Shown here piece after piece: positions 10,175-17,375 of a stretch of 64,000 nt of DNA; positions within the stretch are counted from its first letter, which is position 1, and every line of letters begins with the position of its first letter. The stretch spans positions 181,848 through 245,847 of the forward strand of contig NW_005434602.1 in assembly GCF_000315625.1 (NCBI RefSeq). Reading direction: 5' to 3'. The stretch comes from Guillardia theta CCMP2712 (lineage: Eukaryota; Protista; Cryptophyta). The notes under the pieces are model-generated. The model ran no database searches, was not told the origin of the DNA, and saw only the letters and a program-made list of their open reading frames with translations. The translations under genes and the position numbers were made by a program.

Positions 10175-12432
10175 ATGAGGATCAAATTGAGTGTGATCCT
10201 GGTTCTCTGTCTCACGAGCCTCGAGTTAGTATCAGCATACATAATCACACCTCTCTCAAGATCCCATAACCATGTTAATACTTTCCAGGTAAATGTCCTT
10301 ACTGTCTGAAGTTTTGTTTGCTTCTACTTTCTTGGTCTTCGTTATGTCAACAGATTGTGACCTCTGTTTTATTGTTAGCAGCATTGTTGCTTTTCGCAGA
10401 ACTCTCGGCGTAAAGGCAGGACATGCCAGCTCAGCATGTTGGATCTGCCTACCCTGAGTGAACTGAGCAGCAATGCCCATCTCCATGATCTCAATGCTTT
10501 TGCGCACAACACGTTTTTGAATCTTGCGACGGCTTACGATGAAGTAGGATGAAATGGATGGTGCTATTCGACTTGCTAAAATTTCTTGCAGAATGCTGCC
10601 TCTTTATCACCGGCCGATGAGACTCTGCAAACCATGATCAAGGCTGTTGACATCGGCCCAGGATCTGAAAATCTGCAGCGGGCGTTGTCGATAATTGTCA
10701 ACACGCCTGGAGTAAGACAAGTGCTACAGTTTACGCTGCCACCTCTCGCATTGATCATCTCCCAAGCCATAGAAGCGTTTCTTCCTAACTACATGAAGTT
10801 GCTGGATGCAGTGTCAAAGACCGGTGGACACGAGGGCTTGCTCCCTGAAGGCATTGATGTCACAATGAGGGCGGTGCAACGGCTTGCTGCCCAGGGCGAG
10901 ATCATTCGAGCTTTCCGTGTGTTGCAAGCGGCATGGCCTACCACTCCCTTGCGAGCTGGAGTCGTTGGAGCTGTTCTCTTGTCGTTTTATGCTTTGACAC
11001 CCCCAGGCCTTCTGTTCGGATTGTTCGACATATACATCGTTTCTCCTATCGATAAAGCTTTAGAGACCAAGTGGACAGGTCGGGACTTTTTGATCGGGAA
11101 GCAGATGGGTGGGGGCAACTTTGGAACCGTGTTTGAAGCCAAGGTCACTGAATACGGTAGGAAGAAGCTCAAGAAGGGATCCAACGAAGATGTTGTTTTG
11201 AAGCGTATCGTCACAGATGAAGAGCAGCTGAGACAAAACTTCGCTAGAAAAACTCTCTTTGGCACTTCTCTGGTCGGAGGGACGGTGGCAAGAGGAAATT
11301 TTGAAACTGGCAAGGTTGAGAGCTACTTCAACGAGAGGGTAAGAAGATATGGATTTTCTGGATCCTTCGCTTCCTATTTGGGTGCATTTGTTGGTGGAGT
11401 GCGAATGAAAGAGGAGGGCCAGAGTACTCTAACCATCTCCTCGGATCAATGGCTTGTTTGGAAACTTGAAGGTAGAAATACTCTTGACTTTTACCTCAAC
11501 GAGGAAGACTTTCCTTACAACCTTGAGGAAGCCATTCTGGGAAAAGAATATCCAAACATGGACGCTGGAAAACGAGAGACGATGATCATCAAAGGGATTC
11601 TGAGACCTATTTTAGCAGCTCTTCGTGATATGCATAGGGTTGGGATCGTGCATCGCGACATCAAGCCCGCAAACCTGATCGTCACCTACGAAGGAACGCC
11701 TCCAGTCAAGCTGATTGACCTGGGAGCAGCGGTTGACCTGCGGACTGGAGTCAATTTCAATCCAGAAACAGGATTGCTGGACCCCAAATATGCTCCACCA
11801 GAGCAGCTTGTGGTTCCTCAAGAAGTCCCAAGAGCACCTCCAAGATTCGTTGCGCTGCTTCTCTCGCCTGCTCTGTGGCAGCTCACGTCTCCCGATCGCT
11901 TTGACACATACAGTGCGGGCATCATGCTCATGCAGATGTCGATCCCGGAGCTGAGGTCCCTGCAGGCTAGTGATCAGAATCCCTTGTGAAATTTGAGTGA
12001 CAGGACGGGCAAAGCTTTGGATACCTTCAAAAGTCAGCTGTACAACACAGGGGAAGGTCTGTCAGACTGAAAAGTTCTTCATTTTTCACCCTTCGCATGC
12101 AGATCTCATAAGGTGGAAGGAAGAGTTTGGCAGCCAGTACGACCTGAGGTAACGTTTCTCTCCGCATAGCACGCAACTTGATAGAGAGCCTTCAGCCTGT
12201 TGGAACGCAACGGTGGAGCTGGTTGGGACCTGGCGACTAAACTTGTATGCCCCCGTCCTGCTCTGTTCCTGTCTTGACAACTGTGCAGGTGCGACCGAGG
12301 AATTTTTTCCAGAGAGGAAGATTTTCTGCAAGAGAGGTAAGGAGATCGTGTGGGGACAGCAGGAGGAGAAGTGATGGGATATCCCTGCTGCAGGCCATGG
12401 GGCACAGATACTTTTGGCCAGAGATCATCTAG
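10175..12432 (+). CDS. STN7/STN8 (Stt7/Stl1)-family thylakoid Ser/Thr kinase, probably plastid-targeted
   Basis: Signal peptide MRIKLSVILVLCLTSLELVSA-Y. Kinase motifs GGGNFGTV, VVLKR, HRDIKPANL. Family-specific QWLVWKLEG, FPYNLE, IDLGAAVDLRTGVNFNP..LLDPKYAPPEQ, PRAPP...LSPALWQLTSPDRFD. Intron 11956-12003 restores frame. Ends MGHRYFWPEII*. Confidence 0.88.
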
Positions 12433-12718
12433 ACTTGAAGCTTTCTGCAGCTCTGAAGCTCAGTCGGACGGGGTCGCCAAGAGCCGACTAACACCTTCAT
12501 CGCCGATTCTTTACTTTGTTAAGAATGGCAGCAACCCAGACATAAAGAAACTATGTTGTCACTGACTAGTTTCGAATCGCGGTATGCCATGATTCCACTG
12601 CTGGGCCTCAGTCTCATTGAAGGGATCTGGATACTAAGGGTTGGTTCTCGCTGTCTTTTCTCTTCTCGCCGTTTGGCCTGTCCGACAGTGTCAGGGTCAA
12701 GCCTCCTCGACTCTCCTG

Positions 12719-12758
12719 ATTGTCCTCGTACTGATTTTTAACTTAACTTTGAGTAAAG
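12719..12758 (+). repeat. Dispersed 40-bp motif copy A (ATTGTCCTCGTACTGATTTTTAACTTAACTTTGAGTAAAG)
   Basis: 40/40 identical to 40659-40698. About 275 bp upstream of the ATG at 13034. Confidence 0.95.
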
Positions 12759-13033
12759 GCTCAGTGCAGCGGCTCGCCGCACCGTGAGTGGCGGCCGCCG
12801 GGCCCGGGGTATGAACATCCAAGTCCGCCTCAGGATAAAGCAAGAGGCAACAACGTCTTGATAGGGAACAAGGAGACTTTTTCGAATGCACTTGACCCTC
12901 CTTTCTCCCGCCACTTCCTCCTGCTCCTGCTCCTGCTCCTGCTGTCCTGCTCCTGCTGCAGCTGCCCTGCTGTCCTGCCTTGCTCCCGCTCCCTTCCTCT
13001 CCATCCTCGGCAGCAGTTTCCCTGTTGGGCAAC

Positions 13034-15770
13034 ATGTCTTGCTGTCTGTTCAAGGATCGGTGCAAGATGCCCAATAATCGGGCTGCAACTTTGCGAGCGT
13101 GTAGCTACTGTAGCCGCCCCTTCCATCATCTCTGTTCATCCTCCCTGACCGATGACGTGACGTGGTGTGGAGACTGCGACAAGGAAACCCTTGCAGCGAT
13201 AGAGGAGCCAGAGGCTCTGACATCGACGGGGAAGAGGAAGAGAGTCGCGGAGGACACAGTTCTGGAAAGGAACAGTATCGGCATACTGCAAGAGATGTCG
13301 GCAAACCGAACTGTCGAGGTCTCACACAACTCGAGATCATCCTACACGTCGAGTCAGACACGATTTCTTCAGTGGCTTCATATCACCTATCCAGGTATGG
13401 TGACAGAAGACTTCAGACGCCGGTTGGACATGGCCACGACAGTGTTGCCCTCAGGGCAGACAGTTGACATGCCTACAAGTGAGAGCTTGAAGTCTGCGCT
13501 GAGAGACCTTGCTTGGAACGATGAGGGAGAAGCAGCAGACCCTGAGAAAGGTGAAGAGTCTTTGCCTCCTCTATTGAATCTGACTGCTTGATTCCAGCAA
13601 ACCATCGGGTGGTTCCGATGCACTTCGAGCAATTCACAGCTGCCCATTTCTTGCAATGGATCGAATCGTTGAAAGCAGAAAACCAAGAAATACATTTTTC
13701 TACCGCAAGCAATCATAGATCGGCCTTAAATTGCCTCTACAGAGATTTTGGACAAACCATTCCAGCCGAAATGAAGAATGAAATCGGAGAAGCTTTCAAG
13801 AACTTGAGGAAGAACAATAACAACACAGCTCCTGCTGTCCCGCGAGAGGTCAGGAGCTCTAACAAAGTCCCGCTACCATTCTCTTTGTACACTCTTCTAT
13901 CCGAGAAAATGTTAATATGTAAGAACAGAGAATTTGTGTTCGCAAGGACGTTTTTCATAACATCGTGGAACCTGATGAGCAGGGCGGTGAATATCGAGTA
14001 TATCAAGTACAGCGATATGTCTTGGCATGACGACGCGCTCTGCATACAGTTTACTCATTTTCGATCGGAGCAAGTAGACGAGCGTCTTCGTTGTCCCAGA
14101 AGAATCTACTGCAATCCCAAATGCCCGGAGATCTGTCCCATCCTTGCCTTGGGCATCTACTTGTTAAGTTTTACTCCCGATCCTGAGAAATTGTTTCCCG
14201 GGAGATCGCAACATCATCGTTATCTCAACATCTTGCAGTCTGTGCTGACCTTGAAGGAAGAGGATGCGCAGGGAGGACGGGCCGCGTGGGAGTACCCTTC
14301 AGTGAAGAGGGAGATCAATAGAGGCTTGACTGCTCTTGGTCTTCATCCCAAGGACATCGGGACCCACAGTGTCCGACTCGGAGCTGCGACCTACTGCTCC
14401 TCTTCCAGCACCTTCGGCCCTCCATCGTCCTGCATCCAAGACCGAGCTGGCATGGGGAACCCTTCTTCGTCGGACAGCGAATTCAAGTAGGACGATTCTC
14501 TCTGCCTTGTGCTCATGATGCTTACTTTTCTATCTCCTACAGGTTTGAAGCAGCTGGCGATGCCTTCGTTGGACGGACCGTTGCAGGCCTGCCATTGCAG
14601 CAAGCAGATTTTGCGCTTCTGCCGCCTCACTTTGCGAGGAGAGATGAGCTCATCCCGTCATCCATAAGAACCTACTTTCCCAACCTGCCCTCGTCGATGG
14701 ATGTCGTACTGGAAAACGTGCTTGCTTCAGTCGTGTATCACCTCGACTACTTGAAGAAGAACCTTGATCCTCGACATCCCCTCTGGTTTTCTTCGCTCTT
14801 CCGAAACTTCCCTCTTCTGGACGATCTGAAATCTCGTGTCGTTTGCTGCATGCCCCACCAGACCAATGCGATGAAAGTCACTGGGCTGCCGCCCCACGTG
14901 TACCAGTATCTCTACAACGAGAAGGTTTACAAGGAGCTGGGGGAAGTTTCAGCGGAGAACAAGCTGATTTCACAGAATTTGAAGAGTGTTGCAGACAATT
15001 TCAAAGACCTGTCGAACCGAGTGGTGGCGGTGGAGAGGAAAGTCCAGGAGAGGCTGTCGAGGACAGTAGGAGAGGAAGGGGCATCAGCAGGCCCCGGTCC
15101 CTACGAGGAGTCTCCAGAACTTGAAAGCTACATTCGCCGGATCGTCACTGACACGATGCGCAGTGAGCTGCAGGAACACTTCAAGGCTGCTGTAGCTCAG
15201 ATCACGGCGAACGTGACGGCAGTTCTGCAGCCAAGAGCTTCCTCTATCAATGTGGTGGAGCAGGAAGTGAGGGAGGAACCAGAGGACAGGAGCAGCTGTC
15301 GCGTGAGGGAAAGGCTCACCTTCCCCCCCGATCTGCATTTCAAGGAGGAGCTGGACAGCCCGATATCCGGGTGGACCCTGTGGTACTGCGGGAGTGCATT
15401 GAAGGGATATCCACCCTTCAAGCAGCTGACATCTTGTGATCTGGCGAACCGAGACGACAAGAAGAGACTGTCAGACCTTCGGTTTCTGATCAAGTCCTTC
15501 AACACTTTCATCGAACGAGAGCTCAAAGACAGGTCGGATGAGGATCAAGGACTACAGGAGAAGAAGATGGTGGAGGACTTCAAGGCAAATCCAACCGTGG
15601 CGGTCGCTGAAGCGATCTTCCTCAAGTACGAGTCGAAGTTCTACAATTGGCTCAACATCGACTCTGGCTACAATCAACGTCGTAGCCAGCTGAAGTGGAG
15701 CACCTTCGTCAAGAAGCTGAGGAAGCGAAGCAGCTTGGACGCGAAACAGCTGCCAACGGGGGATGAATGA
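13034..15770 (+). CDS. Crypton-type tyrosine recombinase-like protein (N-terminal Cys/His finger, YR domain, GCR1_C-like C-terminus); exons 13034-13550, 13598-14486, 14543-15770
   Basis: HRSALNCLYRD, KVPLPFSLY, SWNLMSRAVN (catalytic R), CPILALGIY, KDIGTHSVRLGAATY (HxxR), DRAG, FEAAGDAFVGRTVAGLP...FALLPPHF, VTGLPPHV, WTLWYCG...YPPFKQL, RRSQLKWSTF are CryptonF-like signatures. Both introns are GT-AG and join in frame. Confidence 0.85.
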
Positions 15771-15998
15771 GTGCTGTTTGATTCGGACTGTTAAGACGCC
15801 CCAGCCTGGCATAGCAACGAGTCACCGTGCGGCATGTGATCAGGATGTACATTTAATTAAACTCTGAAACTTTGCACAGCGGCCTAACTTCTCCGGCGCC
15901 ACCCCGCTGGGCCTGTGGCCGGGCTGCCAGGGCCCGCTGACCGTCGGCGTCCGACTGCTGAGACTCCCGGGACCGTCAGTAGGACTCCGGGGATTCTC

Positions 15999-16800
15999 TT
16001 TATTGACTGAAAATGGAAATGCAAACCGGAGCAAACAAGGAGGAAAAGGAGAAAACCGACAAATCCGCCTCAAGAAAAAAACCAGGAAACGGAGGAGGCA
16101 GCAAAACCGCTACTCCAACCACGCAAGCGACGGCATGCACGACAAGCAGGGGAACAAGGATCAGGACAAAGAGCAGTAGCGCAAGGCTCCTGCGAGGAGG
16201 ACGGCAAGACCCATGCGAGAGCGATACTGCCGAAACAGACGAGCACGCAAACGATGAAAGCCAGGGTCCCCATACACCGCCTCCTGAGCACAGCCATCCC
16301 ACTCCGCTGTCAACGTTGCTCCATGGTGATCCGCCAGGTACCAAAGAAACCGCAAAGCGTCAGCATGAAGAAGACCATCCGTACCTGCAGTGAAGGGAAG
16401 AAAGGCCTTCGGCGGGTGATGGGTGCCATAACTGGCGCGATGATCCGAAATCTTCTGTTGGGCGGGGCCGGAGAGCGCAGAAAGGCCGATGGAGCTGCCG
16501 CTGCTGTTGTAGGGATGAGTCATCGTGAAGTCCAGAACCAGCCCATTCCAGGTGTGGGTGGAGAGGCCAGGGAGCCAGAGGTCGCCCATGTGTCTGTTTG
16601 TGGGGCCATGCTGAGGGACGTGGGTCCGGGTTTGTCGCAGACCCTGCTGATGAAGCTTGGTGACCATGCCCGCTTCCACGCAGATGTCGCGCAGACCCAC
16701 AGTACACTGCTCGTGTGCGGTGGTCCAGAGACCTGCGCGATGACGACAATGCCAGTGGATTCAGTAATACAGCCGGTGCCGTAACGGACATGAAACTGCC
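15999..16800 (-). mobile_element. Decayed, 5'-truncated non-LTR retrotransposon with restriction-like endonuclease (REL; CRE/R2/NeSL-type) C-terminus
   Basis: Minus-strand reading CPLRHRLYY*IHWHCRHRAGLWTTAHEQ (degenerate Cys/His knuckle plus RH-like motif), then HMGDLWLP...LVLDFTMTHP (PD..D), QQKISDHRASY (K..Y), FLPFTAGTDGLLHADALRFL. In-frame stop present. AATAAA on minus strand at 15999-16004. Confidence 0.7.
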
Positions 16801-16899
16801 CTGTAACTGATCATAACCTTCGAGCATCTTCCAGACTGTCTCTGCGCATAGCATGGCTGGATCGAAAGCTAGATAGAGCAGCGCTAGCAGCTACTTAGT

Positions 16900-16963
16900 C
16901 CTCCTCCTCCTCCTCCTCCTCCTCCTCCTCCTCCTGCTACCCCTCTCCTACTCCTCCTCCTCC
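16900..16963. repeat. (CCT)n microsatellite
   Basis: Directly seen. Confidence 0.9.
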
Positions 16964-17375
16964 TTGAACCCGAACCTTCACGTCGTCCAAGTTTCCCATG
17001 AATATCTTACTGCCCCTCCCCACAAAACAGCTCATTTCGTAATTCTTCTTGTGGTCCCACCGACTCGAATACCATTCCTCCTTCTCGGCTCTGACATCTC
17101 TGAGATCCTTCTTCTCCCACAGTCAGCTCACGGCTGTCAGAAGTAGCTTCCTTGTGTTTGGTGTTCACTGCTGTCCCCCTGCTCCTGCTCTTTCCTAGTC
17201 CTTGCGCTCTATGCAGTTCAGTCTCCGTCTAGCGCCAACAAATTGCAGATTATTGCAGCATCTAGTGTTTCATCAGTTCTCCTTTGTTGACATTGACTTG
17301 ATTTATCTTCTGAGTTCGCCGCTCAGGTTCAACGACATGAAACTTGAATTCTAATACCTTTCTGAAGCAAAGCTG

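What the first reader, a model, noticed from the sequence alone, without database searches (positions are those of the whole stretch)
13034..15770. Intact, spliced Crypton tyrosine-recombinase gene that lacks the catalytic tyrosine: candidate domesticated DNA-binding protein
Seen: three exons join in frame through 47-nt and 56-nt GT-AG introns into a ~880-aa protein with no stops. It keeps R (LMSR) and HxxR (HSVR), but the last catalytic segment reads RAGMGNPSSSDSEFKFEAAGD. Established: CryptonF recombinases read roughly RAGW...D.Y.(Y/F)EAAGD here, and Crypton-derived host genes (yeast Ndc10/Cbf2, Gcr1/Msn1/Hot1; animal ZMYM/KCTD1/QRICH1) typically lost catalytic residues. Here both W and the nucleophilic Y appear substituted, and the alternative donor at 14469 also gives no Tyr. 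No terminal repeats were seen, and an N-terminal PHD-like Cys/His finger is added. Inference: an independent Crypton domestication in an algal lineage, possibly a transcription or centromere/chromatin factor.
Basis: partly seen in the sequence, partly recalled or inferred. Interest (0 to 1): 0.8.

Follow-up and report, generated by a model that had tools for sequence, protein, structure and literature searches.

The report
Catalytically dead Crypton recombinase host gene
A single-copy, expressed and correctly spliced gene in this cryptophyte alga descends from a Crypton transposon's tyrosine recombinase, has lost the residues needed to cut DNA, and is still conserved in a sister genus, so the host has most likely kept it for a new, probably DNA-binding, role.

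Summary
The gene has three exons (13034-13550, 13598-14486, 14543-15770) and GT-AG introns of 47 and 56 nt, giving 877 codons without a stop. Transcript contigs from three studies carry exactly these two junctions.

The protein belongs to a large Crypton-like tyrosine-recombinase family. A model of the orthologue matches Flp (Z 16.4), Cre (14.9) and Ndc10 (14.1). Among 126 relatives, Trp and the nucleophilic Tyr are each present in 125. The only exception is the Hanusia phi orthologue, which shares this gene's Met and Glu at those positions. The beta-hairpin Lys is also replaced, by Arg.

The DNA is single copy. A metagenome contig from a close relative is collinear with it. Exons differ by 2.4-3.8% with no indels, introns by 11-12%, and dN/dS is 0.15. 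Other paralogues in the genome are multicopy, 94-99.7% identical, and keep Trp and Tyr.

The reading as a domesticated, catalytically inactive Crypton recombinase is supported. Two details are wrong. The N-terminal Cys/His finger is ancestral to the family, not added. The family is not CryptonF, because it has no GCR1_C domain. DNA binding is inferred, not shown.

This is a new member of a known kind.

The parts
12970..13033 (+). 5' untranslated part of the transcript. The assembled contig begins its match at 12970 and carries 52 further letters upstream that do not lie here.
   Evidence: table 8, record 6 of run X1
13034..13550 (+). Exon 1 coding part (172 codons plus 1 base). It holds the Cys/His finger and the first helices of the N-terminal core-binding region.
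13040..13177 (+). Cys/His-rich finger (residues 3-48, with a PHD-like spacing of Cys and His). It is shared with paralogues L008, L010-L013, L015, L019 and L020, several of which are multicopy and keep the Tyr.
   Evidence: Pfam gives only a weak Zn_ribbon_8 match, E 0.11.
13551..13597 (+). Intron 1, 47 nt, GT..AG.
   Evidence: Joint 13548/13596 (cut +2) in runs X1 and X2. It is 10.6% diverged from L031, against 2.4-2.5% for the flanking exons.
13598..14486 (+). Exon 2: the rest of the SAM-like core-binding domain and most of the recombinase catalytic-fold domain.
   Evidence: Weak Pfam Phage_int_SAM_4 match, E 0.016. 1934 representative relatives. Fold match.
13981..13983 (+). Arg of box I (LMSR), retained.
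   Evidence: 98% of the family column is Arg
14062..14064 (+). Arg in place of the family's beta-hairpin Lys, which is Lys in 99% of relatives. The Hanusia orthologue has the same replacement.
14365..14379 (+). HSVRL. The His and Arg of box II are retained. The Lys that follows in 99% of relatives is Leu here.
14452..14454 (+). Met in place of the invariant Trp (125 of 126 relatives).
14479..14481 (+). Glu in place of the invariant nucleophilic Tyr (125 of 126 relatives), nine residues after the Trp position.
14487..14542 (+). Intron 2, 56 nt, GT..AG, phase 2 within a Lys codon. Paralogue L019 has an intron at the same place and phase.
   Evidence: Joint 14486/14543 in X1, X2 and X4. L019. 12.5% diverged from L031.
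14543..15770 (+). Exon 3. It holds the end of the recombinase fold (FEAAGD...VGR..GLP), a helical extension conserved in the family, a coiled or acidic linker, the conserved C-terminal domain and the stop codon.
14934..15314 (+). Long-helix and acidic linker. It is the least constrained part of the protein (dN/dS 0.30).
15315..15767 (+). C-terminal helical domain with a basic tail. It is conserved across the family, including Phytophthora proteins. No known fold matches it.
   Evidence: Alignment A2. Model pLDDT 89.8. Best PDB Z 3.8.
15771..15842 (+). 3' untranslated part. Transcript contigs end at 15835-15844.
12609..12792 (.). Upstream stretch that is not collinear with the relative's contig L031, which has about 105 unaligned bases there. 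It contains a dispersed repeat (12700-12760) and is not part of the gene.
15959..16778 (.). Downstream stretch that is not collinear with L031, which has 56 unaligned bases there. It contains a dispersed repeat (15996-16100) and is not part of the gene.

Best explanation
The gene is a host gene exapted from a Crypton-type DNA transposon. It encodes the transposon's whole tyrosine-recombinase protein: an N-terminal Cys/His finger, a SAM-like core-binding domain, the catalytic-fold domain, a helical extension and a conserved C-terminal domain. It has lost the chemistry of strand cleavage: the nucleophilic Tyr is Glu, the Trp is Met and the beta-hairpin Lys is Arg. The phosphate-binding Arg-His-Arg residues are kept. 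The loss happened before Guillardia and Hanusia diverged, and the whole protein has been under purifying selection since. What is shown: descent from the family, the fold, loss of catalytic residues, single copy, a fixed locus, expression, splicing and selective constraint. What is inferred: that it clamps DNA as Cre, Flp and Ndc10 do, without cutting it, and acts as a sequence-specific DNA-binding factor. One possible target is sequences like the ends of the Cryptons that still appear active in the same genome.
For: The exon structure and both junctions are in RNA assemblies of three studies. The family has 1934 representative proteins at E<=0.001, from cryptophytes, oomycetes, diatoms and a chytrid. 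The AF2 model of the orthologue's residues 1-420 has pLDDT 88.7. It matches Flp at Z 16.4 (237 residues aligned, rmsd 3.6), Cre/Tre at Z 14.9 and Ndc10 at Z 14.1, and 102 chains score Z>=8. Trp and Tyr are each present in 125 of 126 family members, and the one exception is this gene's Hanusia orthologue. Family-invariant Lys, Lys, His and His positions are also replaced, identically in both orthologues. The gene's DNA is unique in the 87-Mb genome. L031 is collinear with the gene and both flanks. Its exons differ by 2.4-3.8% with no indels, its introns by 10.6-12.5% and its flanks by 11-28%. There are 52 synonymous and 28 non-synonymous differences, dN/dS 0.148, p about 1e-16. Hanusia phi P0001 is 76-77% identical. 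In the tree, the window gene and the Hanusia protein form a clade (SH-aLRT 98) with a long stem (0.69) and short tips (0.15 and 0.20), nested among G. theta paralogues. Other paralogue groups are multicopy at 94-99.7% nucleotide identity and keep Trp and Tyr.
Against: No DNA-binding or other function has been tested. Orthologues were found in only one other genus plus one close metagenomic relative, so the constraint is measured over a short span (dS 0.09). L031's organism is unknown. The runs with spliced contigs are labelled RNA only by guess, although contigs that lack the introns of a single-copy gene are hard to explain otherwise. The one raw RNA-seq run gave no reads on the gene, but only about 6% of it was sampled. 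Glu at the nucleophile position puts a negative charge near where the DNA phosphate would sit, which argues against simple retention of the ancestral binding mode.
Confidence: 0.8

Rival explanations
1. It is a transposon regulator rather than a general host factor. In this reading it is a dominant-negative, cleavage-dead recombinase that binds the ends of active Cryptons, or forms mixed multimers with their recombinases, and so restrains transposition, as truncated P-element repressors do.
For: Apparently active multicopy Cryptons with intact catalytic residues coexist in the genome. The dead protein keeps every domain of the transposon protein, including the finger and the C-terminal domain. 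At least two other single-copy dead paralogues exist.
Against: It is only 40-45% identical to the active paralogues, so shared DNA specificity or heteromerisation is not assured. No binding data exist.
Confidence: 0.15
2. It is still the working recombinase of a very low-copy Crypton and uses a non-canonical nucleophile or a partner's Tyr.
For: The Arg-His-Arg residues are kept. Flp-type enzymes donate the Tyr in trans.
Against: No Tyr lies in the equivalent helix. Trp and the hairpin Lys are also lost. The gene is single copy at a locus that is collinear in a relative, with no terminal repeats. The same substitutions are fixed in another genus.
Confidence: 0.03
3. It is a decaying, immobile transposon copy whose open frame survives by chance.
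For: The catalytic residues are mutated. Some paralogues (L003, L009) are plainly decaying.
Against: The frame is 877 codons long with no stop. There are no exon indels against L031, while the introns and flanks diverge 3-5 times faster. dN/dS is 0.15. It is spliced and expressed. The orthologue is 76-77% identical.
Confidence: 0.02

Closest known systems
DUF3504 genes of animals (ZMYM2/3/4, QRICH1, KCTD1, KIAA1958, WOC), which are domesticated CryptonA recombinases (Kojima and Jurka 2011, PMC3212892)
   Same: They derive from a Crypton tyrosine recombinase, have lost the catalytic Tyr, are expressed, and are conserved between species as host genes.
   Different: The Crypton lineage and the host kingdom differ. 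The animal genes also lost the second Arg, and most lost the His, whereas this gene keeps Arg-His-Arg. Here the whole transposon protein is retained rather than one domain fused to host domains. There was no Pfam DUF3504 match.
Yeast Ndc10/Cbf2 and Gcr1, which are CryptonF-derived (PDB 3sqi, 4aco, 6p7x)
   Same: They have a recombinase fold without a catalytic site and use it to bind DNA. The structural match is Z 14.1 over 226 residues, rmsd 4.1.
   Different: There is no GCR1_C or NDC10_II sequence match in the protein or the genome. The origin is independent. Nothing links this gene to centromeres.
Crypton transposons of oomycetes and diatoms (CryptonS and unnamed relatives)
   Same: They are single-ORF tyrosine-recombinase elements of about 3 kb, without GCR1_C and with a conserved C-terminal region. 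Phytophthora, Aphanomyces and Nitzschia proteins are 38-47% identical to G. theta paralogue L004 or the Hanusia orthologue.
   Different: This locus is single copy, immobile and catalytically dead. By eye, its motifs do not match the published CryptonS alignment, so the subgroup is left open.
Flp and Cre site-specific recombinases
   Same: They share the two-domain clamp fold (Z 16.4 and 14.9) and the Arg-His-Arg positions.
   Different: There is no nucleophilic Tyr, no Trp and no hairpin Lys. This gene has an added finger, linker and C-terminal domain.

Membership tests
Tyrosine recombinase superfamily (fold) | Two-domain core-binding plus catalytic fold | tested here: met
   The AF2 model of orthologue P0001:1-420 has pLDDT 88.7. 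It scores Z 16.4 to Flp, 14.9 to Cre/Tre and 14.1 to Xer and Ndc10, and the listed top matches are tyrosine recombinases or recombinase-fold proteins such as Ndc10.
Tyrosine recombinase superfamily (enzyme) | Catalytic Arg, Lys, His, Arg, His/Trp and nucleophilic Tyr | tested here: not met
   Arg, His and Arg are kept. Lys is Arg, Trp is Met and Tyr is Glu.
Crypton transposon (mobile element) | Several copies with shared ends and short terminal direct repeats | tested here: not met
   The DNA is single copy. There are no terminal repeats. The locus is collinear in L031. Paralogue groups do meet the copy criterion, and one group has possible TATAAGT ends.
Crypton-derived protein (descent) | Homology to recombinases of elements that carry a tyrosine recombinase and no reverse transcriptase | tested here: met
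   It is 40-45% identical to multicopy elements of 2.6-3.5 kb in the same genome whose only long ORF is the recombinase. In the tree it nests among them.
CryptonF | C-terminal GCR1_C DNA-binding domain | tested here: not met
   There is no PF12550 match in the protein or anywhere in the genome. The genome search's control also found nothing, so only the direct Pfam scan of the protein carries weight.
CryptonS | No GCR1_C, a conserved C-terminal region, and mostly TATGG termini | tested here: inconclusive
   [quoted passage not shown] The published CryptonS motifs look different by eye. No Repbase sequence was available to align by reference.
Domesticated transposase gene | Single copy at a fixed locus, orthologues in other taxa, purifying selection, and expression | tested here: met
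   Sampling is limited to Hanusia phi and one metagenomic relative.
DNA-binding factor | Demonstrated binding to DNA | not testable with these tools
   This is inferred from the fold and the retained Arg-His-Arg only.

The most novel reading that the evidence does not exclude
Guillardia and Hanusia may carry a small set of independently exapted, cleavage-dead Crypton recombinases: this gene, the L016/P0245 pair and L007. In this reading they work as sequence-specific clamps on DNA, either as a host-encoded brake on the still-active Cryptons or as chromatin or centromere factors analogous to yeast Ndc10. That would be a second, independent case of a recombinase fold being reused for chromosome biology.
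Probability: 0.15. Interest if true: 0.75.

Novelty: new member of a known kind. Interest (0 to 1): 0.5.

Why it matters
Domesticated Crypton recombinases are so far documented in animals (the DUF3504 genes) and budding yeasts (Ndc10, Gcr1 and relatives). This is a well-supported case in a cryptophyte alga. It is unusual in three ways. The whole transposon protein is retained. The Arg-His-Arg triad survives while the nucleophile is lost. Apparently active relatives of the source transposon still live in the same genome, so the dead and the live proteins can be compared directly. The literature searches found no report of Cryptons or Crypton-derived genes in Guillardia; the only two papers that mention both terms do so in passing.

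Tried and rejected
- **Pfam scans.** Scans of the three exon peptides and of ten relatives gave only sub-threshold matches.
- **PDB sequence searches.** Searches with the single exons and with a 47-sequence profile found no recombinase. Only structure comparison revealed the fold.
- **GCR1_C and NDC10_II.** Genome-wide searches found nothing. The tool's control genomes also found nothing, so these results are weak.
- **C-terminal domain.** A confident model found no fold match (Foldseek E>1, best VIA Z 3.8).
- **Rfam.** A scan of 12400-17000 found nothing.
- **Raw RNA-seq.** Run X17 gave no reads on the gene, but only about 6% of the run was read.
- **Hanusia DNA.** None could be fetched, so dN/dS rests on L031 alone.
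- **Further orthologues.** A search with P0001 found none beyond Hanusia.
- **Crypton subgroup.** Assigning the family to a named subgroup would have required typing sequences from a paper's supplement, so it was done by eye only.
- **Joined protein.** The exons were searched by reference, and the contiguous Hanusia orthologue stood in for folding.
- **Paralogue termini.** Exact ends of the multicopy paralogues were not resolved.

Full report
**Observation.** The sequence shows an ATG at 13034 and three reading-frame segments. They join through GT..AG introns at 13551-13597 (47 nt) and 14487-14542 (56 nt) into 877 codons, ending at TGA 15768-15770. This is more than a paper model. In read laying, a 2822-nt contig of run X1 (depth 32) covers 12970-15842 with exactly these two stretches removed. 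Runs X2 and X4, from another study, show the same joints. The runs are labelled RNA only by guess. However, the genome holds this DNA once, with the introns, so contigs without the introns are best explained as spliced RNA. The raw RNA-seq run X17 gave no reads on the gene, but only about 6% of it was read. No splice form with a Tyr at the catalytic position was seen.

**What family it is.** Pfam gives only a weak Phage_int_SAM_4 match on exon 2 (E 0.016), and PDB sequence searches are blank. Homology searches show a large family, however.
- There are 67 six-frame matches in the window's own 87-Mb genome, the best at 45% identity.
- There are 1934 representative proteins at E<=0.001 in the 50%-clustered library.
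- Named members come from Hanusia phi, Phytophthora, Aphanomyces, Lagenidium, Nitzschia and a chytrid. Sources name a few of them 'integrase', 'Ndc10 domain-containing' or 'core-binding domain-containing'.

For folding I used the contiguous Hanusia orthologue P0001 (residues 1-420) with a 47-sequence alignment. The model is confident (pLDDT 88.7, pTM 0.85). Its structural neighbours are tyrosine recombinases and recombinase-fold proteins: Flp at Z 16.4 (237 residues aligned, rmsd 3.6), Cre/Tre at Z 14.9, archaeal Xer at Z 14.1, and K. lactis Ndc10 at Z 14.1. In all, 102 chains score Z>=8.

**Crypton character of the paralogues.** Several paralogue groups in the same genome are dispersed copies at 94-99.7% nucleotide identity over 2.5-3.5 kb: L004/5/6/9/18, L011/12/13/15, L002/3 and L014/17. 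The recombinase is their only long ORF. One group appears to be bounded by TATAAGT at both ends (not rigorous). This is the anatomy described for Cryptons: a recombinase only, no long terminal repeats, and short terminal direct repeats (PMC3212892).

No GCR1_C domain is present, so the family is not CryptonF. The C-terminal 150 residues are conserved across the family, including the Phytophthora proteins, which recalls the description of CryptonS. The published CryptonS motifs look different by eye, so I leave the subgroup open.

**Loss of catalysis.** I collected 126 family proteins with a pattern that does not constrain the positions in question.
- The Trp after R-A-G is present in 125.
- The Tyr nine residues later is present in 125. 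This is the same spacing as Trp315-Tyr324 of Cre (my knowledge).
- A second Tyr three residues further on varies: Tyr in 100, Phe in 19.

The single exception at both invariant positions is P0001, the Hanusia orthologue of this gene. The window's protein reads Met, Glu and Phe at these three positions (14452-14454, 14479-14481, 14544-14546).

A column-by-column comparison with 99 relatives shows further replacements at near-invariant positions, identical in the window and in Hanusia. The hairpin Lys is Arg (14062-14064), the Lys after HSxR is Leu, and two His positions are Asp and Arg. The box I Arg, the box II His and Arg, and the structural core (WNL, NP..P..C) are kept. The protein therefore retains the fold and the phosphate-binding triad but lacks the nucleophile, the general-acid Lys and the Trp.

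**Host gene or transposon copy.**
- *Copy number.* The gene's DNA is unique in the genome. Only 12700-12760 and 15996-16100 are dispersed repeats, and both lie outside the transcript.
- *Fixed locus.* The ENA metagenome contig L031 (4375 nt) is collinear with window 11724-12608, 12793-15958 and 16779-16922. The two repeat-bearing stretches in the window, 12609-12792 and 15959-16778, do not align with L031, which has only about 105 and 56 unaligned bases there. The flanking repeats are therefore unrelated insertions, not element ends.
- *Constraint.* Against L031, the exons differ by 2.4-3.8% with no indel in 2634 nt, the introns by 10.6-12.5% and the flanks by 11-28%. Nei-Gojobori counts give 52 synonymous and 28 non-synonymous differences over 875 codons: dS 0.094, dN 0.014, dN/dS 0.148 (Fisher p about 1e-16). 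All three exons are constrained (0.08, 0.16 and 0.16). The acidic linker is the least constrained part (0.30).
- *Orthologue.* Hanusia phi P0001 is 76% identical over exon 3 and 77% over exon 2 and shares the dead active site.
- *Tree.* The window gene and the Hanusia protein form a clade (SH-aLRT 98) with a long stem (0.69) and short tips (0.15 and 0.20). It lies inside a clade of G. theta paralogues (support 87). That pattern fits a burst of change when catalysis was lost, followed by slow evolution.
- *Terminal repeats.* None were found.

Together these results refute both the pseudogene reading and the active-transposon reading.

The N-terminal Cys/His finger is not an addition. The same motif heads paralogues L008, L010-L013, L015, L019 and L020, several of which are multicopy and keep the Tyr, so it belongs to the ancestral transposon protein. 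Intron 2 is also old: paralogue L019 has an intron at the same codon and phase. The CryptonF comparison is not apt, for the reasons given above.

**Mechanism.** The following are shown: fold, descent, loss of catalytic residues, constraint and expression. The following is inferred. The protein still closes around DNA with its core-binding and catalytic-fold domains, as Cre, Flp and the Crypton-derived Ndc10 do, but cannot form the covalent 3'-phosphotyrosyl intermediate. It would therefore act as a DNA-binding factor. The finger, the long helix (possibly for dimerisation) and the conserved C-terminal helical domain with its basic tail are all constrained and presumably contribute. The C-terminal domain has a confident model (pLDDT 89.8) with no PDB fold match. 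What the protein binds is unknown. A brake on the resident active Cryptons is an attractive sub-hypothesis, to which I give about 15%. The Glu at the nucleophile position warns that the ancestral binding mode may have changed.

**Novelty.** Domestication of Crypton recombinases with loss of the catalytic Tyr is established for animal DUF3504 genes and for yeast Cbf2/Ndc10 and Gcr1 (PMC3212892). I found no report of such a gene in cryptophytes. This is a new, well-supported member of a known kind. It is of moderate interest, somewhat raised because active relatives and at least two further dead single-copy relatives sit in the same genome.

**Rules and prior notes.** The earlier findings returned by the scan concerned other loci and did not bear on this one.

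Noticed in passing
L016 (G000:C52:313256-315322): This is a second single-copy paralogue with a 688-aa open frame that lacks His, Arg, Trp and Tyr (it reads SDSIQKG and has no RAGW...Y). Hanusia phi P0245 is 50% identical over 693 residues and also lacks them. It is probably another, older exapted Crypton recombinase.
   Followed up: partly
L007 (G000:C128:144726-146846): This is a third single-copy paralogue with a 706-aa open frame in which His, Arg, Trp and Tyr are all replaced (SASFSKG ... GRQSDG ... SRCEAAGD). It groups with the multicopy L002/L004 clade. No orthologue was found.
   Followed up: partly
L032-L038 (G000:C282, C47, C319, C114, C50, C2, C502): Multicopy Crypton-like elements of 2.6-3.5 kb at 94-99.7% identity have intact Trp and Tyr and appear recently active. 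The C50/C2/C502 group seems to be bounded by TATAAGT on both sides. The exact ends were not resolved.
   Followed up: partly
window 12700-12760: A roughly 60-nt element recurs at 98-100% identity at more than 30 places in the genome. In transcript assemblies it reaches word depths in the thousands, with different sequence on either side. The stretch that contains it (12609-12792) does not align with the relative's contig L031. It has no Rfam match and its nature is unknown.
   Followed up: partly
window 15959-16778: This 820-nt stretch does not align with L031, which has 56 unaligned bases there. Its first part (15996-16100) recurs at 85-97% identity at about 20 places in the genome. It is likely another mobile-element insertion next to the gene.
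   Followed up: no
window about 12970, contig of run X1: The transcript contig carries 52 letters upstream of 12970 that do not lie in 12700-16100. They may be a further 5' exon or an assembly artefact.
   Followed up: no
L019 (G000:C8:376354-379923), about 1040-1100: This Crypton paralogue has an intron at the same codon and phase as the window's intron 2. L011-L015 have another intron after HSIRK. The transposon family itself therefore carries spliceosomal introns.
   Followed up: no
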